A stretch of 64,000 nucleotides of DNA from Styela clava (taxonomy: Eukaryota): assembly GCF_964204865.1 (NCBI RefSeq), contig NC_135252.1, positions 15,810,001 through 15,874,000 on the forward strand. The letters run 5' to 3'. Below the pieces are notes generated by a model. It saw only the letters and a list, made by a program, of their open reading frames with translations. It was not told the DNA's origin and searched no databases. A program made the position numbers and the translations under genes. Below, one piece after another: positions 1,215-42,900 of the stretch. The first letter of the stretch is position 1. Each line of letters begins with the position of its first letter.

Positions 1215-3243
1215 ATGAATATTGTCACCCTGTGCAGCGTGATTTTTTTAATTGTATCATGCGAGGCTTTTTGTCCCGCGTCAGAGAGTGGAGATTTACC
1301 AGCGGGTATTTCTGAAGAGGATTTTATCGATCCCGATGACACTATATCGTATGATGAGGAATCTCCTGAGTTGCCAGAAGGTCTGCAGGAAGCCTATGAA
1401 ATGCACGGTGAAAATGCAGGGGGTGAACCAGTCGAAGACGATGACGTATTAAAAATGAGCAAGGTAATATAATTTCCACATCGATTTATGCCAAGAAAGA
1501 AAGAACATTTTGGTTTGACTGCTTGACAAATAATTAGAATAATAGTCTCAAATTTGCACATGTGGTGTATAAAAATTATAAAAGCAGTGTGTGGACTAGA
1601 TTACCAAATTGACGTTTCACCTGGATTTGAGGCAGTCAACATAATAATTAAATAAACAAAATGTATCACAGACCGGCATCAGTATTTTAAAAGACTTTTT
1701 TTTAAATCAAAATTCTATAAGCAATTAATTACAGTGTTTAAAACATTTGGATTGATGCATTTCCTGCTCTATTTTTTAAACCTCCAAGCGCAGTCTGATG
1801 AACTTTATTAATTTTTTTTTCATTTTTCAGTCAATGCAGGAAATCGTCGATGCAAGTGAGTTAATTTCATTATTCTATGAGATCTGAAGTATCTAATATT
1901 TGTATTCAATGTCAGATAAAGAAACTTTTTGATATTAAATTTCTTTAACCCGTAGCTGTAGGGCATGGTACAACATATTCTACTGTTAATAATGCTTGTA
2001 TCCGGTTACTATATCGCCACGTAATGACATATAGCCTACAAATGGGTAGAATAATACTTAACAAAAGTTATATCTTCTGTCCTACTTACAATATTCAACT
2101 TATCAAATAGGATCTTTAAATTATACGATTTGTTTTGTAATTAATGATCATAAAAATTTATTTTCAAAGATTCAGTTTCTATAATATATATAATGCAAAT
2201 TATTTTCAACAGCCATGAAAAACGGTTTTTCAAAGTTATTCAAAAAAAGGACAGACAAAAGAGCCACAGCTATGGAACTCCTGCAATATACATCACATAA
2301 TACAAACATTGAACCCTCATATCTGTCAGGTGTTTTCATTAGTGCCACCAAAGTCGACAGTCAAAAAGGTAATGTTATAAAAGTAAAAAATTTACAACGT
2401 TTTCCAGGTTACGTTTATTTCAATGAAACGAATACTGAAGATGGTGAATTCAACTATAACATTGACTGTGATTTTGGCGTGAAAATATCTAGGATAGGCA
2501 ACTGAATCTATTATTAAAATGGCTGAATACCAATTTCAATATCATTTCCTAAAATTTTGATACTTTTTATATCAATAAGTTACTTCCTCTACAAAACTTG
2601 CAGCTGAAGGATCATTGAAATCAGTATGTAATTTTAAACCCCACTTCATTCATAATTGTGCTTTCGTCTAATATCCAATCTTTGAACCGCCACTTGCAAA
2701 TCAATATCCGTTCAAACGATGTCACAGAGAATATATATGAATCGGCAAAAAGCATTCATTTGTTATACCATGCCAAAAGACTGGTAGAAAACAATGGTTT
2801 ATCTCATAGCAATGCATTAAAACGCTATATTTTATTGTTAAGATTTGGAAGAAAAAATGTATGTTGAAGAAAAAGCACTAAAAATATTGTCTAAAGTTTT
2901 GCAACATTTTCAAAGGTAAAATTTAAAGAGTCGATTTTGGAAAACTTGCAAATAAATATTCAGAAGAAGCTTATGATGATTATGATGAAACTTAAATATC
3001 ATTAATCGTGTTTAAACTTTCAGTAAAGTTACTTTTTACGTACATTAATCTTTTGTAAACTTTCGTCGAGTTTTTGATTAAATTAAAATTAATGTTGTTT
3101 TTAGCAATCCTTTAGCAGGAAGACCCAAAGAAGAGTTGGAAGAAGCTAACAACGGGGATACAGAAAGTAAAGAAGATAGAAAGCTAGAAGACATACAACA
3201 AGAACGTAGTTCCAAAGAAGACGAAAGCAAAGAGGAGCTTTGA
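1215..3243 (+). CDS. ER-lumenal orphan family protein, paralog 1 (213 aa; signal peptide, acidic N-region, C-terminal KEEL)
   Basis: Exons 1215-1463, 1831-1855, 2213-2368, 2843-2915, 3105-3243 join via GT-AG introns into an open frame. It begins MNIVTLCSVIFLIVSCEA-FCPASESG, the core reads SMQEIVDATMKNGFSKLF...LSKVLQHFQ, and it ends SSKEDESKEEL*. AATAAA at 3276. Exon sizes and phases match the other three paralogs. Confidence 0.9.
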
Positions 3244-5631
3244 AGCAACATTATATATCTCTCAAAACAAACATAAATAAAATATACCAGAGCATATAGT
3301 CAAGCCTTAGGTTAATGTTGTTTCTTGATAATTACATTAAATCCATCATCATTATCAATGCAATGATCGACCAAACTGCCTTTTGGTATAAAATTTTGCT
3401 TTCGTGCAAATACGAGATGGGTTTCTGAAGATATTTTGAATAATAGTCATCGCTGTGGAGGCTCGAGGCGAGCTCGAACTACCAGGATCTAGTCAGGTCA
3501 AGGGCGAAATCTTCTCGATGACTTCTTGTCACTTACTGTCGCTGGCCACATTAGCATGTATGAAACAGGAATGTTTCTTTAGACGCTAAACCTTCATAAT
3601 TGAAATTTTGCTTAGTGGCTATACAGCGGCACATTGCTGATATTTTTAGGGATTTTAGGATTGAATTTACACCATTTCTCCGAGCATGACTTTGAGGTGG
3701 ATATTTAGTTATACCCAGGGGAATGAAAAGGATTGAATGTTGTCATGACCAAACTTTCTCCGATTTGAGTTTAAACAAACAATTATCCTGTAAAAGAGTC
3801 GCCCGAATCAAATTCATGATCGGTAACCCACGAAACCGATAAATGTAGACCCGATCCCTGACATTACAGTATGTGACAGAGACAGCAAACAATAATTATT
3901 GAATAGGAATTACAATCTTGATTCTCTTTGTAAATTGCTATCAAATTAAAATTTCGTAATCGTAATTTACATATTTTTCGCATTTGTGGCCCCAAAACCT
4001 AATAGAAACTCAACTATTTTCAAACTGCCCTTGTAAATGAAATACCTTTTTTACGTACTCGAGATGAGTTGAATTCAGAACTGCAAAAGAGAGTGAATGT
4101 AACAATAATATGATACTTGAGCATATATCACACCGATAAGGTTGGTAACGCGTTGTACATATACAGTCGAAAATGTGCATATACATCCAACTAATTTGGA
4201 CTGACATGCATATATAACCAAGGCCATATCCATTCAACACAATATACATATACAGTCAATAAACAACGGATATATCCGATCCGATCTATTATTCAAAGAA
4301 ATTTAAATCAAATCCTTGCACGGCCGCGTGTATGATATCAGAGAGTTACCTATTCGCTTCGGGAGGCATCGCGGGAGTGAGACATAAAACATTTTGTTAG
4401 AGCGAGTTTTCTTTCTTTCGTTCAAAATAAATTTTCATAATGGTTAATGATAATAATATGATAGATGACATATCACAATTTTATATATTGTTATAACCAA
4501 AACAAAAATCAGAGGTTGCCTCATGCAGATTAATGCATCCAAGGTTTCATGGATATATGCTGTATTGGCTGATTTATGATGTCATAATACTTGGCTACAG
4601 CTGATCACGGGCCAATATCGTTAGGTTATACTTTGAGAACGCCTAGGCCAGTGGTTCCCATCATTTCGTGGCTCGTGGATCCCTTCCGGAGGCTTTTTAG
4701 AACTCATGGCCCCTAATGCCATCATTTTATTTCCATTGATATATATATATATCCGTAAAAAAGCTACAAATTTCGATTCTCATTAGCCCGAAAAGTTTAT
4801 TTCTCTAAGTTTAAGAACAAATAAGCAAAAGAACATAATAGTATATAACATAAGTTATCAAGTGCATTGCGCTCACCTGCATATTGTTTCAAAAGCAACA
4901 ATATCATCGAGTAGACTAAGTACAGCCTACAACAGAAAGCAACCAGCATGCCATCACGCGATTCCGCGACTGACAAAGTATGACACAACTGAAATGCTTG
5001 CTTTCCGTGCACACTAATAATGAATCAAGTAAATTAGATAATGGCCCACTCCCGCTATTCTTCGCGGAGCGCCTAGGCACCGCTTTGATATTAAACATGC
5101 GGTCATGTATGAATTTGGTTTAATGAATTGATCCTTTGTTTAATGGCTGTATATGTATATTGTGTTGGATGATTATGACATTGGTTATATATGCATATGA
5201 TATCTGACTACTATGTTTGAGTGATGGATTCTATGTTTTCAGTAATTCATGCATTTGGAGGACCCATCACAAAAAAGTCACATACAATTGCGTATCTTCC
5301 AAGTATTCGGGATTCGATTCTGAAATCATCAGGTATTTGAAAAATCCCATCCCTAGATGACCTACCTACCTATTAGTATATCGCAGAATAAAGATCAGCC
5401 GCCTTGTCTTTGTTTTTTTGACGATTGAAAAATATAATTGCCCCTGATTCACAAGAGGATTGTCGAGTCGGGTGCGTTCAGTCAAAGAGTTATGTTTTTG
5501 ATACCAATTACAAAAATAATAGACAAATAATATTGTGCGCAAACACCTATTACGTAAACACTTACTTGAATTTATGTCTGTATTGAATTATTGAGTAAAT
5601 ATAATTATACGATTGGTGGAATATATTCTTT

Positions 5632-6505
5632 CTGAGGATGGCCAAACATGGGTCGCGGAAGGTTTAAAAATGGGTCGCGACAAGGTCGTCAATGCAAGGG
5701 CAATCTAAGAGGAGAAGGAAGAATTTTCAGCTTTCCCAATGTTTCAATTTAGCTTCTAAACTCTGGTATTTAAAAATAATGAAATGTAAAATTTCATTCA
5801 CGGAAAGAACTGTCTTGAGCTCATTGTTACATCACAATTCTGATATGCCAGTCACGTGTATTATTTTTATGGTATCGGTAACCATGCACGTCGCTTGTCG
5901 TTGTGTTGACTGCGTGGAATGTCGTCTTAGTGGATTAAAATAACCAAAAATGGGTGTATTTTTGGTAATGTAAATTGTAATAGACGACGCAATGAAAAAG
6001 CTCGCTTCTCGACATTAGATTATTCAATATCTAGAGAAAATGTGACTTCATCTCGAGGCACCATTTACCGCAAACGAAGCAGTGTGTGAACATTTGATGA
6101 GTAAAAAGTTTTATATTGCGAGAGATACCGAAGGCCAGCTAGGATGTCGTGTTTGCGACGGACAGCGGGCGCCTTTTCTGCTACAATTCGCGACAAGGCA
6201 CTTGTGCGAGCGAGGATATTTGGCACTGAAGGTTATCAAAACTAAGCTCGCAATCGCCTCGATACCCGTGACAACTTGCGTATTGCGTTAAGTAAAATAG
6301 AGCTGTGTATTGAAGATATAATGAAAAGGAAATTTCAGTTTCATCAATCTCACTGAGTCAATGGACTGTTTCTAATAAATAGTTGTCTGTATTTGAGTCA
6401 AACTGTACTAACATTAAAAACACATTTTGCGTTATTTAGGATTGGGTCGCTAGTATTCATAAAACTCAGATTTGGGTCGCGCTCGAGAAAGTTTAAGAAC
6501 TACTG
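5632..6505. mobile_element. Decayed non-autonomous hAT-like element
   Basis: Degenerate termini CTGAGGATGGCCAAAC ... GTTTAAGAACTACTG with repeated subterminal TGGGTCGC motifs at both ends; no TSD recognisable. Confidence 0.45.
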
Positions 6506-8363
6506 AACTATACGATTAATATACCCAAAGTTAAAACGGTGTGAAAAAATACGTAAGTCACGATTGCAAGAAGTGTTTGGCCTGCACTCGGTTGTATGAT
6601 TTGATCTGCGTGCTTTATGAAATGTTCAACAATAATTTAAGGTTGATTTGTTTTCACTGCTTAATTATCCAGGAGAGCACCTGTCACAATGATGTTGTCA
6701 AGTCAAGTTTTTATCATTCTTTACAGCACTCTGAATTGATATACCACCATACCAGAGCATTTCCGACTCGGTTTGGATGACAACCATGTTATATTGCTTT
6801 TCTTCGTCACAGCAGGATATGGCAGATATTCAAACAAGTATGGTTTGCAAGGGTGGCCATTGTACCCCAATAAAATTAACCGCTAATATGACCATACTTA
6901 AAGTTTATCGTTAATAATAATATTAGAAAATGATGTCATCATTATGATGATATTATTATGATCATTATCGCCTGGTTATCAATAGGGAAATCGGCGAGTC
7001 GCACGCATAAAATGTAATATATAAATGAGCATAGTACACGTGAATTAAAATGTCTCTTTGCCTCTTTCTGATAATTAAGAACGAATATTGTTTAAGTTAA
7101 AGAAATTCTACTTGAGACTTACGTTCTTATTTTAAAGAGATTATACTTCAACCTACTATCCGGACATCATTTTGCTTTAGACGTTTTCATCGTAGGACCA
7201 AACAAACCAGATGGGTTCAATGTACCGCATTTTTGTGTACGTGCACCAGATTATATCGATACATTGCCAGCGTGAAAATAAGTTAATTTAACTGAATTTT
7301 CTCATTTATTTTTTTGCCGGAAAATAAATTATCAAGCTAATCCTGTTTTTTCGAATACCGGCAATTGAACTTACTCACAGTGTTGAAAATATTGTGAAAT
7401 AAACAGTATATATATTATTTTAACATAACATTTCGTTAACGATTTTTCTTGTGAATGATAATATTGGTGAACGTGGCTGCTATGGCATGATATATGATTT
7501 ATAAACTAGTTGTAGATGGATGTGATATTTTTTATAAAGTATGTTATTATTAAAACGGCAAACGATTCAGAATAACACAAACATTGTGGTCAAAGCTTAA
7601 TCATCACACTTTCACAAAATATAGGACACGTGCAAAATCCGATGAAACTTTCTGCTTTAGGCTACTATTAACTTGTTGTGTCGTTAAAGACACATATAGA
7701 GACGCGTCATCGTTTTAATTTGTCTAAAACAGCAGCAACAACATGAACTAAAAACTCGACGATTGCAGATAACGACAGAATTCAGGACGTTAAGCTGTTG
7801 CTTTAGCATTAGATTCTTAGTATTTTGATCAACAGAAAGTTAGAGTTTTGCTAAAACTGCAGTAAATAAACTGAAACAAATTTCATTTTATTATTTCGCA
7901 CGTAAGATCGAATATTTAGAAAAGCATTCGCTCCAATATAGTATGAAAGAGAAGGATCAGTCAAGGTTACGAAGCATCAGTGCAGGTTCATGAAAGAAGA
8001 TACAAACCCTGTTTTAGCATTGGTGTATGCATAAACGTGGTTTTGTTATTTTCCTTGTGAACTAACTTGTTTTGCCCCAAGCCTAATCCTTACAATTTCG
8101 AACACGTTTATCTCGGCATAAGATAATTATTATTAGTCAGGTACAAACTGTGAGTTAAAATGGTATCACGTTTTCAAAATTTGGTAAAAAATTTAGGACA
8201 TATAATACTGTAAATGTAGTACATTTTACACGTGAATCGCATTTGAACGATATTCTGTAGCATTCGAGCACCGACTATATTTAACTAATATATATTTTAC
8301 ACATATTGCACAAATAAGCAAAAGCCATTAGAAACAAATCATCAAATTATAAATAGTACAACA

Positions 8364-10561
8364 ATGAAGACCAATATTCTGTGTTGCATCGTTTTTCTCT
8401 TTGTCACGTGCCATGCTTACTGTCCTGCGGAGCATACTGGAGAGTTACCACCAGGTGTTACTGAAGACGATCTGTTGGATCCCAACGTCGGAGTCGCATA
8501 TAACGAGGATTCTCCAGACCTACCGGAAGAATTGAGAAATGCCATTACACTAGATGAATTGGATGATTTAGAACCCCCATCCATAAGCGGGGATATTTTA
8601 GAGAACAGCAAAGTAACCTAGGCTACTTGCTTTTATATATAGGAATGATTCAAAATAATTTTACAAAACTGCACAATAATTGCGTATAAAAATGATTAGT
8701 ATTATTTTTAGAAATTTTTATCGTAATTAACGACAAATAAATATGCGGTATGTGTAGAAATTACAATAGTATATGTTTGCCAGAAACGTTTCTAAATTAA
8801 AACAAAGCCTTTAAATGGAAAAACTAAACTAACAGTGATAATTTGTCTAGCATTCGCATCGAACATCAAAATATTTATGCAAAGTTTTGTGCTGATACTG
8901 TTTTTAGTATTAGCTCGAGGCAAGGTAACAAAAAATTACACAGAAAGAAATACCGAAATGATGACCACAGTCCACGGAACTAAATTATCGAGTTATTCCT
9001 TGAAATTTTCGCATTCCAGTAATATATGGTCCCTACAGAGATAGCTTGATTAGGCAAAAATAAAACAAAATGTTAGGAGTTAAAATGACCATGTCATATA
9101 ATTCTCATCATCAATACTCAATGATTTTAATTTTATTTTACAGTCGATGCAAGAAATCATGGATGCAAGTAAGTTAATTTTTCAAAGAGCCGCATGTGAC
9201 TAATATAATGATACAGCGATTTTAGCCTTTCCAGATTGTTAAACTTTCGAAAATTTTGCAAGGTTGTTGCATTGCATATAGTTATATATTTTGTTTTATT
9301 TGGTCTTGACGTACCTAAAATCATATTAGTCATAGATAAGCATTGAACTAGAATTTTTATAATACTCCAATCACCATATGTCGATACATTATCCGAATTA
9401 TTTTAACAGCAACGAGCAAAGAATTCTTAGAATTATTTGGTGTAACACACGACCAGAAAGTACCAGCTATGGAACTCTTGAAATTTGTATTGGAACATAC
9501 AAAAATTATACCTGGATACCTGACAAATGTTTTTTCAGAAGTTACCAAAGTGAACAGTCAAACAGGTAAATTTATTGAAACATCCGCATGTTACGTTGTT
9601 GACATTTCATTTTATCATTCAATACACTAAACGTACCGATGAATAGATTTGCTAAATGTCTCTGGAGATGAAAGAAATCTTCACTACTACTGGAACAAAG
9701 CTTTAAATTATTCAATCGCCAAAGAGTGTGCAGTGTCCGATATGGTATTAATTTTGTCAACTATATATAGTCTCCTTGGGGCAATTTAAATTTTTCTACT
9801 TATGAAACACTGCGCCATCGCGTGGCAATTTAACACTTTCAAATATTTTCTCATTTGTTCCCCAAACCATCCATTTAAATTGCTTCGAATGAATTTATTC
9901 AGAATTTGAAGAAAAAATGTACGATGAAAATGGAGCAATGATATTGATGTCTAATGTTTTGAATCATTTCCAACAGTAAGTTGTTATTTGCGTGAAGATA
10001 GTAATAGATCTATAAAAACGGACAACGATAAAACAAAAATATGGCCAAAAAGTTTATTGTTAGTTCTTCATTTGTTGTTTTTCGACAAATGCTGCATCCA
10101 CAATGTTTGCTGAAGAACGTCGAAGGCAAAAACAAAACTGAATACGTTAAATCACCTCGCACATATTTTATATATATGTATATCTCTAGATACGGGCAGA
10201 CTTACATAGGGTAATAATAATTGCTGCCATTTCGCTATACGTCAACTGATACATAACTAATTTATTTGGCACATAATGATAAGCAAGTGAAAATCAATTG
10301 CTATAAACAGCAACCATGGAACAAAGCAGAAAGACATTTCTTTTATTTTTTCTTGTAAATCTCTTCACCGTTACGTTATTATTAAGAAATCCCTATGGCG
10401 GAAGACCCAAGTCTGAAGATTTAGGTGTAGAGGAAAAGACCAAAAAAGAAGGAGAAGCTAAAAACAAGAAAGCATTAGAAGATGAACCCAAATCGACTAA
10501 AAAAGACGAACCGGAACAAGAGCAAAAGGCTGGAGAAAAACAAAGCAGAATCGAGCTTTGA
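8364..10561 (+). CDS. ER-lumenal orphan family protein, paralog 2 (225 aa; signal peptide, acidic N-region, C-terminal RIEL)
   Basis: Exons 8364-8612, 9144-9168, 9410-9565, 9903-9975, 10387-10561; the first four are the same sizes as in paralog 1 (249/25/156/73). It begins MKTNILCCIVFLFVTCHA-YCPAEHTG, the core reads SMQEIMDATTSKEFLELF...MSNVLNHFQ, and it ends EKQSRIEL*. AATAAA at 10634. Confidence 0.9.
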
Positions 10562-11830
10562 TAAATGACATCTTGTTATGTGCCGCCACAATCAACTATA
10601 TTACTGACTCCTGGATCTGAAAAGAATAGACTCAATAAAATTAGACAACGCAAATACTGATATTATACTTACTTGAATTTACCTATTTCAGCAAAGAGTT
10701 TCGTGTGTGTGTGTGTTTTTCATTTGCAAAGCATGCCATGTGTCTTGATGCTTAACCGTTGATCAGTTTAGACTGATCGACGACCAACTATTTACTGAGG
10801 CCCCTAGAATGGAGTAGGTTATTATTATTTTAATAAATATCAATTCATTGCATTCACGTGTAATATTACTTTATTTGGAAAACAACGCATCATGTGTTTG
10901 AACGAATTATCGAGAAAGAGATTGAGTAAACGCGACTCAATCAAAAGACTGCCTTTATAAAACTCAAATTAGCTTATTTCAGTATCTATTGATCCCATAC
11001 AAAAACGACAGTTTTTGACAAACTTCTTGTTCAGTCATGACCTATTTATTACCAGTAAGCTGAAGAAATTTTTCAGATTAGTTTCAGCTGGCATGGGAAA
11101 AAGCATTGAGTTACAAAGTAAGAAAAGTGTTAAAAAGCCATTCTGCCAGAGCTTTTCACCGAGATTAAATGTTGGCAATAACAACCTGAAAAAGAACGGT
11201 TTCATAGACGCCATGTACATACAGTGATTAATTAAACATTAGATAATAATACAATTTCAACAAGATATGCATGGCTTAAAAGGCGAAACTCGATATTCTG
11301 ATTAACGTATTGCGTTACGTCTATGTGCTACCGTATTTGCATAGTACTAATAAAAAAAAACAATGACTTGATTGGCGCCTTAGTGTCGATTTCAATAATT
11401 AGTGTTTGTTTGACATTAACGTAAAAAACGATGGGTGTAGAGTCATAGATACAGCATGCCAGTGTCGCAAAATCTAAGTTGTCTTCAGCGCCATTCTGCA
11501 TAAAATTGTTTCGCCGGATGTAAGTTTAACTTATACAATTGTACAGGTAACTTATACAGTTAACTGCTGCGTGCTACGTTGTTTGGAAAGTGACTTAGTT
11601 TTTCCCTGACTTACACGTGCTTCGAACTCGTTGTAACACGTCATCACTATACCGGCGTGCCGAAGCTAAAGTTCATTGCCTCAGGCAACAAGCAGCTGAA
11701 TCGAGTACTGGTGTAATCTTGACTGACAGCTTTAGTCTGATATAGCCAATATCAATTTACGTTATTTGAGAAATAGCTGCAAATACAGAAGATTTGTTGT
11801 TTATGCAAAGCTGTACCTTAGCTGTTGACC

Positions 11831-13185
11831 ATGAAATATATTGTTTTTACCGTTTATGTATTATTCTATTTATGTAATACGTCAGAAGCAGGCCCAGAAA
11901 CAAAAATAGTAAGTAATGCATATTAATTGCCCTTTTTCGCTTCATTATGTCTGTTGTTCATCAATTGAATTTATTTTATTCATATTTTTCAGTCACTCAA
12001 CGAATTTATAGATGCAAGTAAGTTATTTTTAACATAATTTACTATCACATTTCTCCAGCAAGTTTGCCTTTATTTATAAGATATATATGTACTGCTTGTT
12101 TGTAGGATGACAAAAGAAATTTTAAACGACAAAGTATAACCTCATTGAATTATCAATGTGGTATTTCAAAATACGGAGAGTGAAAGGCTCTTAGATTGTA
12201 GGGCATATACGAGATAAACAGGACCAAAGATATACTTAGTATATATACAAAAATAGGCCTATATCTTAACCTCTCTGCAGTGACCTGAACTGCATCATTG
12301 AGTTGAAGTGCTTCACTTATGTTCTTCCCGTTCACTTGTAACACATTTCTGTTTTTAATTAATATATTTAATTTTCTATAGCACTTTCCTCAAAATTTGA
12401 TGACAATTTCTTTGGAGAAGAAAAAGAAGCAACAGCTTTAGCTATTCTTGAATATTGCACAAAAGAAACTAACATAGATCCAGAATATCTTACTAATGTA
12501 TTCTATGAAGTCCTTGAAGTGGAATCAAAAGAAGGTAAAAAATACGAATCCTACATACTCCATAATTCTTGTTATGTTGTGGGTTGAAAGTTTTTGATAA
12601 TTTAAATAAAAGCTTTTGATGAAAACTAAACGGTGGTTATAACTACTCAGACGAAATATTTAGAAACGGCTATTTAGTCTTGATAAGTTGGCGGACACCA
12701 AAATATATTATCTGAATTGTCCGCAGATGCATGACTCTTCCCGAAATAAACATATATCACCCCCTAAACATTACTTTCAGAACCCAGCAAACAGCCAAAT
12801 TGTAATACTGCAAAACGGTATAGTATTCGGTAGATTTTCACAGTCCGTACTAGAACAAATTTTCTGTTTACCCCGTACAAAGCGTCTGTACCCTCAAAGC
12901 TATAACAACTGATAAATTGCTGATTTTTCAGAGCTGGAGGGAATCAAGTACAAATTAGAAAAAGCTGTCGATATTATGAACTTGGTGATCAAACATTTTC
13001 AAGGGTAAGTACATTGATTTTGCTATCACAAAATTTTGAAAGAGGTTACTTGTTTTTTATACATAATATTGGCAAACCCCACACCATAAATATTCATTCA
13101 TCGGTTTTATTTCAGAGCACCTAACGATGCTGGACGGCGGCCATCGGAAAAAACTAAAGAAGAAAAACAGAAAGACGAATTATAA
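11831..13185 (+). CDS. ER-lumenal orphan family protein, paralog 3 (132 aa; signal peptide, C-terminal KDEL)
   Basis: Exons 11831-11908, 11993-12017, 12382-12534, 12932-13004, 13116-13185. Translation MKYIVFTVYVLFYLCNTSEAGPETKISLNEFIDATLSSKFDDNFFGEEKEATALAILEYCTKETNIDPEYLTNVFYEVLEVESKEELEGIKYKLEKAVDIMNLVIKHFQGAPNDAGRRPSEKTKEEKQKDEL*. Absent from the ORF track. Confidence 0.9.
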
Positions 13186-13761
13186 TTGCACAAAACGTTT
13201 TATTATTCATAAAAGCACAACCATCTAGTGTCCGTTTATAAATAGTAGCTGTTTTTTTTTGTATTTTGTACTGCTGTACCAACTGGCTTTCGCTCATTAT
13301 TTCTACATAACAGATTTGTAAAAAGACTGAAATAACTAGCGCCAACGGCGACATGATAAGAATTTAAATCTCAAGAGTTTATTGGTAAATAGCATATATA
13401 TACTGTTGGAAGTATAATAATAATTTTTGTATACCTCAATTCAACCCCATATTTCCATGTGCAGTGTAATAAATAAACAAACAAAATGTATTATATGTTA
13501 TGATAGAGGTAGTATACCTTCGAACCGTAACACTGGCAAATATTTATATGTAGGGATAGATTAAGTTAGTAAGTAGTCAGTGGAACAGTTGGAGAGGAAA
13601 TAAATAGTAAATTCAGAGAATCCGAAGGAACAAACCTTCAATCAGATGTCTGTCATCTTCAAACACATTTCCAGCAGATGACAAGGCGTTTAAGAAAGAT
13701 AAACTAAGATTTTTCCAAGAAAATGCTCATATAGATATTACATAATACTTGGAAAAAGGAC

Positions 13762-13867
13762 CTCCTGAAGTATGCTCACCAAGATGGCGCACAACCTAAA
13801 CTCGGGTTGTGTACCAGGTTAGTGTTCAGGTTATGCGACATCTTGGTGCGCATACTTCAGGAGCACC
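13762..13867. mobile_element. Short palindromic MITE, family A
   Basis: CTCCTGAAGTATGCTCACCAAGATGGCGCACAACCT ... AGGTTATGCGACATCTTGGTGCGCATACTTCAGGAG inverted arms. Confidence 0.75.
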
Positions 13868-14772
13868 TAAAAAAAATATAGAATCAGATATACAATGTGC
13901 CTTACACAGTCTCTTCTCAGGGTCAAATGAGACTTTTTGCACACCCTGCAAACGACACCCAAATGTGATTGTGATGCTGATTGAGGGAATAGACTAAAAA
14001 ATCTTTTTGTTCACTTCCCTCTTTAAACGATATGGAATAACATGAATTTAGGACATTTCAATGACTATGTTTTCTTTGCATTTACCTGTTTTCGTTTCGT
14101 TTGTAAACACTGAACATGTCAAAATCGTCGTTGGAACTTGGGAAATTTGAAATAATAAAAATTAATGGGCACTGTTGCATTCGATTCTAAATAATAACGA
14201 AGATTTCATGTCAAGACTATGTGCTTGGAAAAATCTTTTTGCGCGATTTCTCGGTAATATATCCAAAAATACAGAAAAGACATAGAAGACTATTCTGTCG
14301 AATTGATTTTGAAGTTTTAGAATGACTTGAAAATAGTGAAACGATATACTTAAATCAGCTACTGCTGTTTTATTTCATTCCCTGTAGTCACGAACTTTGT
14401 AGTTACAAATACACCAATAAAATTGCCAATACTTTTTGGCACATTATTCAATAGATTATGCGATTTGTCTGATGTATGCGATTTAACAATTTGCAGAGTA
14501 CAGGGGCGACGCAATTGCACAGTGGAAGAAACTAGCCGTGGGCGGTGGTCATTACTACCAATTATCACCATTGTTCAAAACAAATTTATATTTCTAATCC
14601 CTGATCTTCTGTATAATAGATATTAAATTTTGAGCACTGCTTTTGTTGTTTTGGTCTGCATGCCTCGAGGCGTGATGCGGCCCAAAATCTGATGTGTCCA
14701 ACAGTATTGTAGCTTGAACCATGTTTTCACGTTAGTATTCGATTGATCAGTCTTGACAAATACCAGATAAGA

Positions 14773-17240
14773 ATGATACGCACAGGAAAGAGTTATGGTT
14801 TACTATTTAGTGCTGTTATATTGCACGTAGTCTCATTATGTATTGGGATCGATATATCTTTTATAAAGGAGGTAAGTACAGTTCTTGGTATATTATAATC
14901 TGTGATACCGTTATGGTGGCGGTGTATAGATCGCTTCGATTCTAAACATAACAAAATAGAAAATGACTTACCTAGACCGTGAACATCCATAGCTCAATGG
15001 CTTGGCCTGTTATACTTTTTTCTTGTTCATGTCCGTAATAATTAACCAATCAGAAAAACGTTTACGGTGACGTAACAATGAAATTTATGTAGCGGCATTT
15101 TTCACGCAGACGAATTCGAGCATGGTTGTGGATTTGGACTCGTTGTCATAGTGTTGCATAAACTCCATAAAGCATAATGCATACTATATCACAGTTTAGA
15201 GTTGTGTTTTCACATGAGTTAATTGTCATTTTATTTTCGAAGAGTTTTAGTCTAGTTATCGCAATCAAAAAGTATTTCCGGAAAAGCTGCGGCTGTTCCA
15301 CCCTAAAATTAGTTTAGTACGTCTGAATGACAAATGGTTAAATATTTTCAATCGAACTTATGGCTATGAACATGCCAACCATATTGCAAGCGCAAACCCG
15401 AACAAAAATTTATCAACGGTGAGGCGTAGGAAGAATATTTCTGACGACACGGGTCGGGGAAAAACATCCGTCCAACTTCTCATCTTCGTAAAATAAAAAC
15501 AAAATACCGGAAACTTAACCTATTGCTGATGACGTGTCCCATGGTAGAAATTTTTCAATTCTATTTTATTCGGGAAGTTTTGCATCGATCGTGTTTCGAC
15601 GCCTGGAATACGTGTTTTGGGCAATAATATAGCAAAGTTTACAAGTGGGCCCTACATATTCGCATTCATAAAATCCAAGTCTATTGTTTGTTCCAAATTC
15701 AGTACAACAAATGAAATATGTGGTATAGTTCCTAAACGAGTGACATAATATAGAGAAATTTATTACCATTTTTAATACTGAACATACTAATTTATACAAT
15801 TTAATTTACTTTTTTAGTCGGGGGACTCATTGATTGATCTTGGTGAGTTTTTATTATATTTAGATTTCATTTTATATCTATATATATATTAATATTGATC
15901 TCGCAAATATTCACCAATTGAAATTATTCCACAATTGAGCCAATAATAATTGATCAGAAACGTCCAAGTTACCGTAGATGTTTCAACCTTCTTTGTATTA
16001 TGAGGTTCTAATAACACAGGCAATGTTGTTGAATTTTACTTTAGCAGATGAATTTGTTTCCTATTTTTTGCCCAAATAGTCAAATGTTTCGTTTTTTGCT
16101 TCAGTTTTATCCGACGAATTTGAGGGTCTGTTTCGGAGGGGAAATGGCGAAACTGACGGCATGAAGCTCTTTCGACTTATTGAAGCTAACACCAAGCTTA
16201 AAGGTCCCGACTTCGAAGAGCTGTTTTATAAAATGCTTGGGGCTCGGTCGTTAGAAGGTATATCGCCGTTTCATGATTTATATCTATTATACGATTTTAA
16301 ATATTTACATCGAAATAGCAACTTAATGTTAACATTGTCAAGTTTATTAACTTAATATCCAGATAAAGAAACACATATTTATCGCGTATATGTTATTCGC
16401 TGTTAAAATGGTACACAACCACGATTTACATGTGATTCTGCTATACCTCCCACCCTCTGTGCCGTGCCAATTCATTCTTGGCCCTAGGTTTTCAATGATT
16501 GTGCTTGAATAAGCTACATATATCCAGTCAGTATATTCATCTATTTAAATTGCCATTTTTCCCATTTTTCAGAATTGCAACAAACAAAATATGATATGAA
16601 TAAAGCAACAAACGTAATAAACTCATTGATAAAATTGGCAGATAAGTATGTATTTTTTTTCGAATAACTAGATACTGAATAGTTCAATACTATTATTTAT
16701 TATGATAATTGTCTCGAAGCAAATTATTGTGCACTCACTCTGAAGTGAACTTACTTCTGAGGTAAAATCTCTGACATGCCAAGATCTAGAGGGTGGATGC
16801 TCAAAAATTTGTTTTTCTGTCGAGCATCCGTCTATGCCTCAACTATGTAACAAAGATAATTCTGTAATTATTTAGATTATATTATGATTGATAATCAATT
16901 ATGCAAAGTTCTTGCCTTGAAAACGATTTCAAAAAATTGTCACCTTAAAATTGGGTATACTCAACGGATTTCAGGCAGCACGATGATAAAATTAACCCAG
17001 ATAGGACAAAATCAAGAGCTGTCTCTTAGAAAAATTTGTGATTTGTGCATTTTTAACATTTATTTCAAGCGAGTTTTGAATTCTTAACCAATAATATAAT
17101 ATTCAATTTACAGCATTTCAGTAAACCAATCAAGAAAACCTGGTTCGAAATATAAACATGAAGATGAAAGAATTACTGCAGCAAAGAAATTATTAAAAGA
17201 CAAATTAAAAGGCTCAGTCCAGTTCAAAGAAGAACTTTAA
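14773..17240 (+). CDS. ER-lumenal orphan family protein, paralog 4 (158 aa; signal peptide, C-terminal KEEL)
   Basis: Exons 14773-14871, 15818-15842, 16105-16257, 16573-16645, 17114-17240 (internal exons 25/153/73 nt as in paralog 3). It begins MIRTGKSYGLLFSAVILHVVSLCIG, the core reads SGDSLIDLVLSDEFEGLF...INSLIKLAD, and it ends GSVQFKEEL*. AATAAA at 17287. Exon 1 is the least certain assignment (phase-0 GTAAGT donor and signal-like sequence). Confidence 0.85.
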
Positions 17241-19783
17241 TTGAAAATGACGTTGTTTTTGTTATTTCTGATTGAGCAATTATTCGAATAAATCCTTGGA
17301 TATTTAAATAAAATTACAGTAAGCAATATGTTTGGTGTATATTTATGGGTTGGCTCGTTGAAATATAGCAGGCTAGCCAACTCAGTTAGGATCTATATTA
17401 GTTTCATGACCAGCCCATATATACAGTTCTTGTCGGAAAATGTCGGACATTCCTGGCTGTTGGCCTGGCCCGTATGTGGTAAACAGTAATTGTCAATCCT
17501 AGAATGTCCTGGCGCCTGATCATCGCATGCTGCATTCTAAGGATACTTTATCAAATAAGGCTTCATTCGTATTCTGATTATTATTTTTATCTGCTTGTTG
17601 TAATTGGCAACAATATGTGAATTTTCAAATCTTTGTAATAGTTACTGGACACATAATATGAATATCCTATCTTCAATAAAATTTTCGCATGTCATTGGCA
17701 CCCTCGGCCTGCATGTATATACGCTACATAATAATTGACATATTTAATGTAATGCAAGCCCCTAATATATATATATATATAAACAAAATGTAGATAGCCA
17801 AAATGCCAGCAGACTATTTAGGCAACATTATGTCTGCTGATAAAAAATTTAATGTGGAAAAAAATAATCTTGATAACAATAAGTTCAAGAATTTGATAAT
17901 GTGTCCTGCCATCTAACGACACGCACAACAGAAATTATCCTCACGTTAGAAAAATGCATTATTTTGCGAGAGTAATTAGAATAATGGCAATGACCTGATA
18001 CTTTACACCGGACGTCATTAAGATAAAATTGTGCGCAGTAGTTATTAATTCATTGGGATCAAGACCTGAGGGAAAAATAGCCTAAACCTAGATATATATA
18101 GGTACCTAGAGAGTAATGCCTAAATATATACAAGGAGGTAAATGTCCGAGCAAAATAAGATTAATGTTAAAAGAATTGTACTGAACGTGTATCGTGAATT
18201 ATTGTCGTGCCATATTTTGGATGGGTAAAAATTTCTAGCGACTTTCTCATTTCAGTAAGGAAAATTTGTAATGGATTGGTTTATTAAATTTGAAGAAAAA
18301 CAATTTTCTCAACAACAACAACAACAAACAGTTTAGCAAAACGATATGATCATAAACATAAATATCATTCTATAATTGTACGCAAATAGCAGCACGCAAC
18401 GTCTAAGAGTAAGAAAGGCAGCTAAAATTCCTTGCAGTCTTATCTGAATAAAAAACCACATGTTTTCTATTCACCACTCAAATAAACCAGTACGCTGACT
18501 GTGTCCAAGCCCTGGACACTGATAATTCTTCCTTAGTGCTCGCTTTGGTATATCGAGTAAATTGAACTTATCGACCCACTAGCGAGTTTTACGGCATAAA
18601 TGAGACAAAACATGGGTTCTCTATTGCATTTGATATATTTATTTCAAACAAGTTAAAACGGTACAAATATTCTATATTGAGAGATTGAATTTTTCATATT
18701 AAGAGTCTGTTACTTTTAGTTGTTTCCGTGTGATTATGCTGTGGCAGAGAAATCATGAAATTACGATAATCTGATAATGAATGCGAAACTGTGAGAATCC
18801 AGTAGAACTCTGTATCTAAGGATAAAAAAATTTCGTGTTTTAAAACCGACTATGTTCAAATTCCATGTTGCTTTAGAATTCAATTTAGCAGTTTGTTTTC
18901 ATTCCAAACATATCAGTTGTTCAGTTGAATCATGATATATGTGAAATTATTTTAACTGCTTTGAAACATAGATTCATAAACACACTTAGTAATCGCAAGA
19001 TGCTAAAATTGTCAAATGAAAATCGTCACTTCTGGACCTACATTTATCAAGTAAAAGTGGGTAAAATTGTTCGTGCTTCCACTCTCTGAACTATGAAGAA
19101 ATCGTAAGATAAATATAACAATTTTTTTTTTACATTCCGGGTAGTTTTTTTTCTCAAACCGAATCGAACTAGAAGCCACACGTTGGTCGACACGCAACGC
19201 ACGTGTTTAGAAAGGCCCTTGCTTCCACCGATATTTCTTCGTGTGGTTCGAAACCTCTTGTTGGACGATTTCCTGATCTGAAGTTGCCATTTAAAATGTC
19301 TTCATCGGACTCTGGGGCTGATAAGATAAAAAGATAAAGAGGCGTATATTAGTAAACGCAAGGAATAGGAATACAAATTAAAATCGCTGTTTCAAGCCAA
19401 ATTTGGTCATCTATCAATGTTTTTGGTTAGCTTGACATTCAACATGAACTGTAAAGTTTCTAATAAAATGTCGTTCAGGGCGACTGACACAAACGCTCTG
19501 ATGACAGAGTTGGCAATCCCAAAAGTCAGTTGATCGGTTGCCGATTTGATTTGGCACAACTTTTAACAATATAAACCATATGTACATCGTGGACAATGAT
19601 ATAGTTTTGCACATTTTACTTTGTATTCTATTTTTTATGACATATTTGAAAACTAGACAATTTTCAATTTATTTTACATTGGTGCAAATTATTGTTCTTC
19701 ACTTATTAAATTCATTATTCCGATCGGTTACGAATCATTAATTTCTTATCGTTATAGGCTAGCAAGTTTGAGAACATATTTGC

Positions 19784-29663: not shown

Positions 29664-36392
<6,729 letters not shown>

Positions 36393-39978: not shown

Positions 39979-42900
39979 TTAAGGAGAGAATGCTGGTGGT
40001 GGACCAGATGCAGAAAAATTGAAAGTAGTTGGCACATTAGTGGTGTTAAATTGATAACCTCCAGTCTTTTCGATTTTTTTAGACTCTGCCTCTGCTTGCC
40101 GCTGGTCCGCAGTTGTGAAAACTTCCTGAAGGTTCTTCCTTTGATCGTCAGTCAAACCAGAAACAAGCTGATTATACCATCCATTGTTATTTAATTCCAA
40201 TTGTTTTAAGACTTGCTTGAAAATGAAATATTCACTGCCAACATTATCTTCATCATCAAAAGAAGATGCGTAAATTTCAAGCGGCGTCTCTCCATCACTG
40301 ATATCACTGTCGCCATCAATACCATTTAAAGAACTCTTCTCCAGCATTTCTAAGTATTCAGCAGACTCTTCATCAACCTCATCCTCGCTTGATTCAAGCT
40401 CCTCACGTTCATGATCACTCTCATCTTCTTCCTCATCAGAATTCGAGCTTTCACTGCTGTTCTCTTCCCCTCTACTTCTGTAAGCTTGAGTCAGTCCTTG
40501 CAACATTAAGATTAAAGAAGGTAAAATGTCTGGTGCAAGTTCAGATATGATTTTTGGTCGTTCCGCAGAATCAATCACAGTACATAGGCCAAGTACAGAT
40601 ATCCGTCTATCATGAATTCCGAGAAAGCAATCTGCATCTTTAAGCCACTGGCGAAAAAATTGCTCAGTAACAGTTTCCGTTGTGTTTGGGAACTGCATGC
40701 TTTCCAATGTTTGAAAAAGTAAGGTGGGATTGTAATAAAGGGCAGCAATTACAACTTGAAGGCACATGGTTCGAAGTTCACTTGTTTTCACTTCTTTGGT
40801 GAGTCTTTCAAGAGCAAGCTGAACAAATGAAGGGATGCACTGGTCAATTTTTCCATGGCATTGCAAAATGATTACTTCCAGAAGTTTTACAGCATGACTT
40901 TCTGCATCTTCTCCATTTTGTTCTTCAAGAATTTTTTTGCACATTTCAAATACTGTTTCCATATTTTTTGTGTTTGACAAAAATACATCTGTATCAACAG
41001 TGCAAAAGTTGTGCACGACAGGCATCATTTCGGAGAAATAATCAAAGCCGTCATCGTCGAAAATAACTTTAATCAATGGCAATGCCTCCCACATTTGTGG
41101 TGAAATTGCTTGGCAAGTTAAAGAATACATTAACGATAAGATTTCTTCATAAAAATCCATAATTCTATTCTTCAAAACATGGGCAACCACAGGAACAACA
41201 ATACTTTCTAATTGTACTGTAATATCTCTTTGTTCCTCCATTGTATCCAAAACTGTTTCAATTGTACTTAACACTCCCATAGCAGCCACTGATCTGTTGT
41301 CAGATGCCTCATCGTCATCATCTCCAGTACCATTGATTTGTCCATTTTCATCCGTTAATAGTTTGAAAAACGTCATCACCAAACTCTGTGTTATGTCTAC
41401 TGCATATGGTATCACTTGCTCGCAATAAAGACAAATAATTTTATGCACAACTGAAGTCAACTCATCATTCTCTGTTTCATGCACAAGTTGAAGTAAACTC
41501 TGAATCATGACATTGATATAAGGTTCACAACGCTTCTCAGCTTTTTCCTTGTGCAACAGTAGAGTCTGAAGAGCAAAAGCAGCCTCAACTCGAACTGGAA
41601 GTTCAGGGTCATCAATAAGAAGTGTACGTATTCCATCAGCCACTGCAAATATATTCGAATCCTTTTTGAATGTGATTCGGCTGAAATGCTGAGTGACCCA
41701 TACGGCTCTTGCTCTCATGTATCCAAGTGTACTCTTGTATTCTGGAATAACATGGGTAAAAAGCATGCTTTCTAGTTGACTTTTGTATACTTTTCTTTTT
41801 CTTAGGGTTGATGATAAAGATCCAATAATATGCAAAGCTCCTTCCTTGCGACGAGGTTCCGTTTTTGTTTCATTGGCAACCAGAACTTTATGACAAAAAC
41901 CCATTGTTTTTTGCACAACTTGCTTTCTTTTAGTACAAGCGGACTGCAAGAAACACTGAGCTGCACTCGATGGAGAAAAGAAATCTTCCTTGAAATCAAA
42001 TCTTTCACGAACAAACTCATGTGGGTCATCGCTCCACAATTCTTCGTCTTTTTCTGAGAAACACATCAGAGGAAATATTACATCTTTCAAAACTTCGTCA
42101 TAAACTCCTTTCATGACTTTCCAAGTTTGAGAATGGCTAACTCCTTGTTCCAAAAATTGCATTGTCTGTTGTAAGACGCGAGGTGATACATATTTTCCCT
42201 TGCTGTAATCACCCAATACTTTCAGAAGAACATGAGTTGCTCCGACAGCGTACCTTCGCAAGAAAAATTCAGAAAATTGATTATATTCTTGACTAACAGT
42301 CCCAGGACTACCATATCTTTCAAAAACTCTGGTTAAAATATGCAGAGCCCACTTTTTACATTTCCACCATGGTAAATCGGGTCTCTCTAATTCATCCACT
42401 TGTAGAGTTTCTTCAGGTGGTGCCTCTTCAATCACAATTTGAATGTATTTCATCCAGGTATCCAAAACTGCACCTTCAATCAATTTGAGAGGCAGAGAAT
42501 ACTGTGTAAGAGCGTAAATCACTTTCAAACACTGCTTTTGAATAAGCACAGACTGAGCAGACCCATCATTGAGTGCATGCTGAAAAAGTTGTCCCAGAGC
42601 GGGTAGAAATATTTTCATTGCTTCCAATAATGGTACCCTCTCTTCTCGTTTCTTGTACTCATATTTTTTAACCAATTGATACAAGGTCTGCAAAGCTCCC
42701 ATCCATGTATTTGGATCACCTCCCAAGTAGTTGGCAATCTTGTCTATGATTCCTGGCCATCGCTCTGGAAAGTCTTCCCTAATGATTTGATAAACAGTGA
42801 CGCTCATTTGACTTCTGATAACTTCAGGAGCATGTATAATGGCCTCGACAATATTCTCTCTTATAATTGCTTTATCATTTTCATGAATGAAAAAGACATC

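What the first reader, a model, noticed from the sequence alone, without database searches (positions are those of the whole stretch)
1215..17240. Tandem cluster of four unrecognised ER-lumenal proteins (signal peptide + conserved core + KEEL/RIEL/KDEL/KEEL)
Seen: four same-strand genes share one architecture, namely a phase-0 signal-peptide exon, 25-nt exon, 153/156-nt exon, 73-nt exon and charged last exon. All splice in frame with no stops despite strong divergence. The cores align (F..LF ... A(M/L).(L/I)L ... T(N/K)I.P.YL..VF ... S..EL....Y...KA..(I/L)...V..HFQ ... GR.P), and every protein ends in xxEL immediately before the stop. Established: signal peptide plus C-terminal KDEL-type tetrapeptide defines KDEL-receptor-retrieved ER residents. 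Such proteins are usually conserved chaperones or enzymes (BiP, PDI, calreticulin, CREC), and I see none of their motifs here (no CxxC, no ATPase, no saposin Cys pattern). Inference: a lineage-specific, expanded family of small ER proteins, possibly ion-storage proteins or client-specific chaperones for a specialised secretory cell. Intact frames with low identity imply long-term selection on all four copies.
Basis: partly seen in the sequence, partly recalled or inferred. Interest (0 to 1): 0.88.

Follow-up and report, generated by a model that had tools for sequence, protein, structure and literature searches.

The report
Four orphan ER-retained sea-squirt proteins
Four neighbouring genes of the sea squirt Styela clava encode small related proteins with a secretory signal peptide and a KDEL-type ending that should keep them in the endoplasmic reticulum; they fit no described family, so the family is real and lineage-restricted but its function is still unknown.

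Summary
Four + strand genes at 1215-17240 share one five-exon layout (x / 25 / 153-156 / 73 / y nt, all GT-AG, same phases). They encode proteins of 213, 225, 132 and 158 aa ending KEEL, RIEL, KDEL and KEEL. All eight junctions of genes 3 and 4 are seen in spliced contigs from three studies. All four models correspond to RefSeq "uncharacterized protein" records of Styela clava.

The family is an orphan. Pfam and PDB sequence searches find nothing. A profile search of 1.84 billion protein representatives finds three of the genes plus three short fragments from unidentified sources. The 377-Mb genome holds no fifth copy.

Two AlphaFold models and an ESM Atlas model give the 85-residue core as helix-loop-helix twice. 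EF-hand lobes are its most frequent structural neighbours (myosin light chain, S100, calmodulin). Scores are in the noise range (best Z 7.3, Foldseek E 0.07), the Ca2+-ligand positions are not kept, and profile comparison with EF-hands fails.

Best reading: soluble ER-lumenal residents retrieved by the KDEL receptor, whose core is a binding module rather than a Ca2+ sensor. ER residence and function are inferred, not shown.

The parts
1215..1463 (+). gene 1 exon 1: signal peptide plus acidic N-terminal extension (83 codons, phase 0)
   Evidence: joined model read by eye as identical to P0002 (XP_039267034, LOC120342319)
1831..1855 (+). gene 1 exon 2: 25-nt microexon
   Evidence: AG/GT; P0002
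2213..2368 (+). gene 1 exon 3: 156 nt, first half of the conserved core
   Evidence: 95 bits to the exon-3 profile
2843..2915 (+). gene 1 exon 4: 73 nt, last helix of the core (..HFQ)
3105..3243 (+). gene 1 exon 5: GRP motif, acidic tail, KEEL, stop
8364..8612 (+). gene 2 exon 1: signal peptide plus acidic N-terminal extension
   Evidence: joined model read by eye as identical to P0003 (XP_039267267, LOC120342492)
9144..9168 (+). gene 2 exon 2: 25-nt microexon
9410..9565 (+). gene 2 exon 3: 156 nt, core
9903..9975 (+). gene 2 exon 4: 73 nt, core
10387..10561 (+). gene 2 exon 5: GRP motif, charged tail, RIEL, stop
11831..11908 (+). gene 3 exon 1: signal peptide (26 codons)
   Evidence: junction 11908>11993 in X1 contig; P0001 (XP_039267268, LOC120342493) differs by one residue
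11993..12017 (+). gene 3 exon 2: 25-nt microexon
   Evidence: junctions 11908>11993 and 12017>12382 in contigs
12382..12534 (+). gene 3 exon 3: 153 nt, core
12932..13004 (+). gene 3 exon 4: 73 nt, core
   Evidence: junctions 12534>12932 and 13004>13116 in X1 and X5
13116..13185 (+). gene 3 exon 5: short basic/acidic tail, KDEL, stop
14773..14871 (+). gene 4 exon 1: signal peptide (33 codons)
   Evidence: junction 14871>15818 in X1, X5, X6; P0011 (LOC120342277), 158 aa
15818..15842 (+). gene 4 exon 2: 25-nt microexon
   Evidence: three runs
16105..16257 (+). gene 4 exon 3: 153 nt, core
16573..16645 (+). gene 4 exon 4: 73 nt, core
   Evidence: three runs
17114..17240 (+). gene 4 exon 5: basic tail, KEEL, stop

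Best explanation
These are four tandem paralogues of a family known so far only from Styela clava and a few unidentified relatives.

Shown: the genes are spliced as predicted (genes 3 and 4 by RNA contigs; all four correspond to RefSeq models) and are homologous to one another. Each has a hydrophobic N-terminal segment, no other hydrophobic segment, and a [K/R]-x-E-L end.

Inferred step 1: the N-terminal segment is a cleaved signal peptide, so the proteins are soluble in the ER lumen.

Inferred step 2: the terminal tetrapeptide is read by the KDEL receptor, whose gene is present in this genome. Escaped molecules would then be returned from the Golgi, which makes the proteins ER residents.

Inferred step 3: the conserved core of about 85 residues (the 25-nt exon through the 73-nt exon) folds as one EF-hand-like lobe, that is, two helix-loop-helix units joined by a short two-stranded sheet. 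Its loops have lost the Ca2+ ligands. It would therefore act as a small protein- or peptide-binding module, as Ca2+-free myosin light chains do in the cytosol, or MCFD2 in the early secretory pathway. A likely role is an escort, adaptor or regulator for particular secretory clients.

Inferred step 4: the acidic extensions of genes 1 and 2 (20-23 % Asp+Glu) may add low-affinity cation binding.
For: Gene structure and reading frames.

Splicing: all eight junctions of genes 3 and 4 are in contigs of three studies, with intron depth zero in X5 and X6.

Public full-length records match the models: P0002 and P0003 read as identical, P0001 differs by one residue, P0011 has the same length.

Homology of all four.

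Signal-like N-termini: the highest 12-residue Kyte-Doolittle mean is 2.5-3.1, with small residues at -3/-1 of the likely cleavage sites. No later 19-residue stretch exceeds 0.7.

Tails: after the conserved (G/S/R)-R/K-P motif they are 38, 50, 13 and 32 residues and not alignable, yet all end in [K/R]-x-E-L.

Motif: KEEL and KDEL fit PROSITE [KRHQSA]-[DENQ]-E-L. For RIEL, the reporter screen in PMC2140024 found K and R effective at -4 and every residue except Pro accepted at -3.

Receptor: a KDEL receptor locus (PF00810, 70 bits) is present in the genome.

Fold: AF2 of gene 3 has pLDDT 83-91 over residues 31-110, and AF2 of gene 4 has 79-89 over 31-110. Both show H-loop(E)-H twice. Foldseek lists are dominated by EF-hand lobes. 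The VIA second look gives myosin ELC N-lobe Z 7.3 (rmsd 2.8 over 73), S100A12 Z 7.0 and calmodulin Z 6.9. The ESM Atlas's own model of gene 4 has mostly EF-hand families as neighbours.

Selection: genes 1 vs 2 dN/dS 0.43 at dS about 1.
Against: ER localisation is not tested. A KDEL-like end is neither necessary nor sufficient in every protein (PMC2140024 reports Prosite-matching motifs that retain poorly).

No signal-peptide predictor was available, so cleavage is judged from hydropathy and the -3/-1 rule.

The EF-hand resemblance is weak. No Foldseek match reaches E 0.001 (best 0.069). All Z values are under 8, which the tool itself calls the noise range for helical models. In the unbiased searches, unrelated helical chains score alongside the EF-hand proteins.

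Both AF2 models rest on a 7-row alignment.

Pfam EF-hand models do not match at E up to 10. hhalign of the core against 19 EF-hand pairs from this genome gives P 0.35.

The binding-module function has no direct evidence.
Confidence: 0.6

Rival explanations
1. They are extremely diverged members of a known ER/ERGIC EF-hand family (CREC proteins such as reticulocalbin or calumenin, or MCFD2). They would be reduced to one lobe and still work through Ca2+.
For: The fold neighbours are EF-hand lobes. CREC proteins are ER-lumenal with an HDEL-type end. MCFD2 is a 16-kDa lumenal protein with a disordered N-terminus plus two EF-hands (PMC10317151). In genes 1 and 2 one register of loop 1 keeps Asp at position 5 and Glu at position 12 (read).
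Against: No Pfam EF-hand or other hit at E up to 10. Profile-profile comparison with 19 EF-hand pairs of the same genome, one of which reads like a CREC-type pair, gives P 0.35. Loop positions 1 and 3 are Lys/Gly and Arg/Thr. Loop 2 has no acidic ligand pattern in any paralogue. CREC proteins have six or seven EF-hands. MCFD2 has no retrieval signal.
Confidence: 0.15
2. They are mainly ER cation (Ca2+) buffers. The function would lie in the acidic low-complexity extensions, as in the calreticulin C-domain or calsequestrin, with the core only a scaffold.
For: Genes 1 and 2 have 49 and 46 Asp+Glu of 213 and 225 residues, with net charge -26 and -23. Gene 3 has net charge -11.
Against: Gene 4 has net charge +2 and a basic tail, and gene 3 has a tail of only 13 residues. 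The part shared by all four, and by the fragments from other sources, is the core and not the acidic segments.
Confidence: 0.12
3. They are secreted, or conditionally released, factors. The xxEL end would retain them only partly, as with MANF/CDNF-type proteins that leave the ER on Ca2+ depletion, or would not work at all.
For: They are small, soluble and charged, and tandem lineage-specific expansion is typical of secreted effector-like families. Contig depth of gene 3 relative to gene 4 differs strongly between runs (contigs only, a weak hint of condition-specific expression).
Against: All four copies keep [K/R]-x-E-L at the very end, although the tails before it differ in length and cannot be aligned. 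There are no dibasic processing sites flanking a conserved peptide, and no cysteine framework.
Confidence: 0.1

Closest known systems
Soluble ER residents retrieved by the KDEL receptor (functional class; PROSITE ER_TARGET, extended code of Raykhel et al. 2007, PMC2140024)
   Same: N-terminal signal-like segment, no membrane segment, C-terminal KEEL/KDEL/KEEL (Prosite-conform) and RIEL (fits the extended code). The receptor gene is present in the genome.
   Different: This is a class, not a family. None of the catalytic or chaperone domains usual in it (thioredoxin, Hsp70/90, lectin, FKBP, multi-EF-hand) is detectable.
MCFD2 (soluble co-receptor of LMAN1/ERGIC-53)
   Same: Small lumenal protein: signal peptide, disordered N-terminal stretch, then a single pair of EF-hand-type helix-loop-helix units used to bind partner proteins (PMC10317151). 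This is the closest analogue in size and layout.
   Different: MCFD2 binds Ca2+ through canonical loops and needs it to fold. It has no retrieval signal and is held by LMAN1. No sequence similarity was detected, and MCFD2 is not among the listed structural matches.
CREC family (reticulocalbin, calumenin, Cab45, ERC-55)
   Same: ER or secretory-pathway lumenal, acidic, EF-hand-based, HDEL-type end in several members.
   Different: CREC proteins have six or seven canonical EF-hands and are recognised by Pfam EF-hand models. Here there is one degenerate lobe, no Pfam hit, and hhalign P 0.35 against EF-hand pairs of this genome.
Ca2+-free EF-hand lobes (myosin essential light chain N-lobe, S100 apo forms, 'defunct' EF-hand domains)
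   Same: Best structural neighbours of both models: ELC Z 7.3 (rmsd 2.8 A over 73 residues), S100A12 Z 7.0, calmodulin N-lobe Z 6.9. Like them, the loops lack the full ligand set.
   Different: Those are cytosolic proteins. Similarity is at the level of predicted fold only and within the noise range. Homology is not shown.
MANF/CDNF, canopy (CNPY), ERp29/Wind D-domain: other small helical KDEL-type ER proteins
   Same: Similar size, helical, ER-retrieval end (ERp29 itself ends KEEL, from established knowledge).
   Different: The saposin-type cysteine pattern is absent: the mature proteins have 0-1 Cys. There is no Pfam match to ERp29_C or saposin-like families.

Membership tests
KDEL-receptor-retrieved soluble ER residents (class) | Cleavable N-terminal signal peptide | tested here: inconclusive
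   Hydrophobic core with 12-residue KD mean 2.5-3.1 within the first 30 residues, and small residues at -3/-1 of likely sites (CEA|F, CHA|Y, SEA|G, CIG|I). No SignalP-type predictor was available, and cleavage is not shown.
KDEL-receptor-retrieved soluble ER residents (class) | C-terminal tetrapeptide matching [KRHQSA]-[DENQ]-E-L or the experimentally extended code | tested here: met
   KEEL, KDEL and KEEL match Prosite. RIEL fits Raykhel et al.: R is effective at -4, and any residue but Pro is accepted at -3.
KDEL-receptor-retrieved soluble ER residents (class) | No transmembrane segment in the mature protein | tested here: met
   The highest 19-residue KD mean after residue 30 is 0.27-0.68.
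KDEL-receptor-retrieved soluble ER residents (class) | ER localisation that depends on the tail | not testable with these tools
   Needs tagged expression with and without the last four residues.
EF-hand superfamily | Paired helix-loop-helix fold with a short sheet between the loops | tested here: inconclusive
   Both AF2 models show it. EF-hand lobes are the most frequent neighbours, but the best scores are Z 7.3 and Foldseek E 0.069, both under the tools' significance levels.
EF-hand superfamily | Sequence match to EF-hand profiles (PF13499, PF00036, PF13405 and others) | tested here: not met
   No Pfam hit at E up to 10 for exon pieces or for P0001-P0003, and none at E up to 0.01 for P0011. 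hhalign against 19 EF-hand pairs of this genome gives P 0.35.
EF-hand superfamily | 12-residue loop with ligands at positions 1, 3, 5 and 12 and Gly at 6 | tested here: not met
   Read from the alignment and the DSSP register. Loop 1 has Lys/Gly/Phe at position 1 and Arg/Thr at position 3. Only genes 1 and 2 keep Asp5 and Glu12 in one register. Loop 2 has no acidic pattern.
CREC family | Six or seven EF-hands recognisable by sequence | tested here: not met
   One lobe only, no Pfam hit.
MCFD2 | Two canonical Ca2+-binding EF-hands and no retrieval signal | tested here: not met
   Loops are degenerate and a retrieval-type end is present. No MCFD2 sequence was available through the tools for a direct comparison.
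Saposin-like ER proteins (MANF/CDNF, CNPY) and ERp29 D-domain | Conserved cysteine framework, or a PF07749/saposin-like profile match | tested here: not met
   Mature proteins have 0-1 Cys. No Pfam match.

The most novel reading that the evidence does not exclude
A taxonomically restricted family of ER-lumenal single-lobe pseudo-EF-hand proteins arose in styelid or stolidobranch ascidians. Its members serve as KDEL-tethered adaptors or escorts for lineage-specific secretory cargo, for example tunic or blood-cell products. This would be an ER-retained counterpart of the MCFD2 principle. The paralogues would be specialised by their N-terminal acidic extensions and by a single free cysteine that could form mixed disulfides with clients.
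Probability: 0.2. Interest if true: 0.65.

Novelty: new variant of a known kind. Interest (0 to 1): 0.45.

Why it matters
The set of soluble ER residents is thought to be old and conserved. A lineage-restricted, tandemly expanded, transcribed family that keeps a retrieval signal on four divergent copies would show that the ER lumen can gain new resident proteins in one animal lineage. It would also offer a compact test case for what a Ca2+-ligand-free EF-hand-like lobe does in the lumen.

The practical value is modest. It gives four RefSeq "uncharacterized" proteins a testable localisation and fold hypothesis. It also flags them for ascidian expression atlases.

Tried and rejected
Searches that found nothing useful:
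- Pfam on ten exon translations and on P0001-P0003 found nothing at E up to 10, and nothing for P0011 at E up to 0.01.
- A PDB sequence profile search gave only chance rows, E 0.075 or worse.
- The search for homologous proteins with gene 3 alone and gene 4 alone returned only the query. With the family alignment it returned only the family.
- P0006 (3347 aa) and P0007 (ankyrin repeats) from the representative search are spurious.
- The ESM Atlas feature search gave no usable hit. Its structure neighbours for gene 3 come from a poor model (pLDDT 0.44) and are meaningless.
- A full-text search for the LOC ids and for Styela plus KDEL found nothing relevant.

Ideas rejected:
- ERp29 D-domain, saposin-like, J-domain-like, RAP and MESD were each considered. 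None has a profile match, the cysteine pattern is absent, there is no HPD motif, and none appears among the top structural rows. RAP domain 1 reaches only Z 4.0.
- hhalign of the core against EF-hand pairs taken from this genome gave P 0.35, so homology to EF-hands is not claimed.

- Run X10 (another organism) laid nothing on 11500-17400.
- No complex-prediction job was sent, because no specific pair is claimed to bind.
Full report
**What is there**

The window is from Styela clava: the public proteins that match the models are named so. It lies at G000:C3:15810001-15874000 of a 377-Mb assembly.

Between 1215 and 17240, four + strand genes share one layout:
- a first exon ending in phase 0 (249, 249, 78 and 99 nt)
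- a 25-nt microexon
- an exon of 156, 156, 153 and 153 nt
- a 73-nt exon
- a last exon of 139, 175, 70 and 127 nt

All sixteen introns are GT..AG. The joined frames are open and give 213, 225, 132 and 158 residues ending KEEL, RIEL, KDEL and KEEL.

The joined models were built only inside local scripts, for translation, alignment and dN/dS. Searches were made exon by exon by reference, and afterwards with the public full-length proteins that the exon-level search returned.

**Are the models real?**

- All four junctions of gene 3 are present in spliced contigs: 11908>11993, 12017>12382, 12534>12932 and 13004>13116.
- All four junctions of gene 4 are present: 14871>15818, 15842>16105, 16257>16573 and 16645>17114.
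- Gene 4's junctions are seen in three runs from three studies.
- Single contigs of 618 and 565 letters span the gene 4 exons from 14712 or 14666 to the last exon.
- In X5 and X6 the introns have zero depth, so these runs behave as RNA.

The exon-3 profile search, however, returned public proteins of exactly the predicted lengths. P0002 (213 aa) and P0003 (225 aa) read letter for letter like my joined models, and P0001 (132 aa) matches gene 3 but for one residue. Gene 4 is P0011, 158 aa. All four are RefSeq "uncharacterized protein" records: LOC120342319, LOC120342492, LOC120342493 and LOC120342277. So the genes are annotated, but nothing has been said about them. No paper in the library mentions the LOC ids.

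**One family, four copies**

- Genes 1 and 2 are 45 % identical, and gene 3 is 37-41 % identical to them.
- Gene 4 is 23-30 % identical to the others but clearly homologous. BLASTP against gene 3 gives 8e-12 over 103 ungapped residues. hhalign against a profile that excludes it gives 95.5 %, E 1.4e-8.
- The identical exon sizes and phases are independent support.
- Searching the whole assembly with the exon-3 profile and with the full alignment finds only these four genes.
- dN/dS between genes 1 and 2 is 0.43 at dS of about 1, and it is below 1 in every segment. The other pairs are saturated.

**Distribution**

hmmsearch of the exon-3 profile against 1.84 billion representatives gave eight hits at E up to 0.001:
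- three S. clava proteins
- three short ORF fragments, P0004, P0005 and P0008 (ENA and Logan, single contigs of 0.7-3.2 kb)
- two spurious hits (a repeat protein and an ankyrin protein)

The fragments are nearest to gene 3 (48-52 % over the exon-3 segment). Each runs on with a Gly exactly where the S. clava donor GT lies, which fits a conserved intron position. No protein of Ciona or any other annotated animal reached significance. On present data, the family is restricted to S. clava and a few close relatives, or it evolves too fast to be seen further away.

**Targeting signals**

- Each protein starts with a hydrophobic stretch (12-residue Kyte-Doolittle mean 2.5-3.1), followed by small residues at -3/-1.
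- No later 19-residue stretch exceeds 0.7.
- After a conserved (G/S/R)-(R/K)-P motif, the tails are 38, 50, 13 and 32 residues long. They are of different charge and not alignable, yet every one ends [K/R]-x-E-L. Keeping that end through such divergence is the main argument that it is used.
- KEEL and KDEL fit the Prosite pattern.
- For RIEL, the reporter screen of Raykhel et al. found K and R effective at -4, and all residues except Pro acceptable at -3 (PMC2140024).
- A KDEL-receptor locus is present in the genome (PF00810).

ER residence is therefore a well-founded inference, not an observation.

**The core**

Pfam, the PDB sequence search and the ESM feature search are blank.

AlphaFold2 with the 7-row family alignment gives confident cores for gene 3 (pLDDT 83-91 over residues 31-110; mean 72, pTM 0.61) and gene 4 (79-89 over 31-110). 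The signal peptides and tails are disordered. Both cores read helix, short strand, helix, helix, short strand, helix. That is the pattern of one EF-hand lobe.

Structural neighbours:
- Foldseek lists are dominated by EF-hand proteins, but the best E-values are 0.23 and 0.069.
- The second look with VIA-align on the gene 4 model gives myosin essential light chain N-lobe Z 7.3 (rmsd 2.8 A over 73 residues), S100A12 Z 7.0 and calmodulin Z 6.9.
- The unbiased searches give best Z 5.7 and 6.2. EF-hand proteins are frequent but mixed with unrelated helical chains.
- The ESM Atlas's own single-sequence model of gene 4 also has mostly EF-hand families as neighbours, at TM 0.38-0.43.

Against homology:
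- No EF-hand profile matches.
- hhalign of the core against 19 EF-hand pairs cut from this same genome gives P 0.35.
- The ligand positions of both loops are not kept. Only a hydrophobic or aromatic residue at loop position 8 of the second loop is conserved (the invariant Tyr).

I therefore call the core EF-hand-like by prediction, with degenerate loops, and I do not file the family under EF-hand proteins.

**How it most likely works**

Steps 1-2 are supported by motifs. Steps 3-4 are inference from a weak fold resemblance and from composition.
1. The proteins are translocated into the ER and the signal peptide is cleaved.
2. Molecules that escape are retrieved from the Golgi by the KDEL receptor.
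3. The core acts as a small binding module. This resembles Ca2+-free light-chain or S100-type lobes and, within the secretory pathway, MCFD2, which is a 16-kDa lumenal protein with a disordered N-terminus and two EF-hands that bind LMAN1 and cargo (PMC10317151).
4. The acidic extensions of genes 1 and 2 may bind cations. Their one mature cysteine, two residues after the predicted cleavage site, could form mixed disulfides.

**Surroundings**

The neighbours are unrelated housekeeping genes on the other strand: CDK8/19-like exons at 29.6-36.4 kb, and an intronless importin-7/8-like ORF at 39979-43167. Nothing suggests an operon-like functional cluster.

**Verdict**

This is a new, narrowly distributed protein family within the known class of KDEL-tagged ER-lumenal proteins. 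It is of moderate interest.

Noticed in passing
window 13758-13870 and about 20-130: Palindromic MITE-like repeat (two arms around ...caccaagatggcgcacaacc...). In the RNA-type runs it draws hundreds of contigs with summed depth 9,000-41,000 and 'opposite strands' joints. It is therefore a very abundant, transcribed, hairpin-forming element of this genome.
   Followed up: no
window 39979-43167 (-): Uninterrupted 1062-aa ORF that reads like importin-7/8 (RanBP7/8). An intronless copy of a normally multi-exon gene may be a retrogene.
   Followed up: no
window 29664-36392 (-): Exons of a CDK8/CDK19-like kinase: an N-terminal exon with the [11 protein letters not shown] glycine loop at 36135-36392, a kinase C-lobe end at 32449-32688, and a Gln/Ser-rich end at 29664-29981.
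   Followed up: no
window 1269-1277 and 8418-8426 (codons 19-21 of genes 1 and 2): Genes 1 and 2 keep a single Cys in the motif (F/Y)-C-P-A directly after the predicted signal cleavage site. It is the only Cys of the mature proteins, so it could be a site for a dimer or a mixed disulfide.
   Followed up: partly
window 11831-17240: Contig depth of gene 3 and gene 4 is similar in run X1 (about 2,000 each). In X5 and X6, gene 3 is about 3-5 against 60-130 for gene 4. This hints that gene 3 is expressed in a stage- or tissue-specific way. The data are contigs only, so they are not a measurement.
   Followed up: no
It was not examined here.
   Followed up: no
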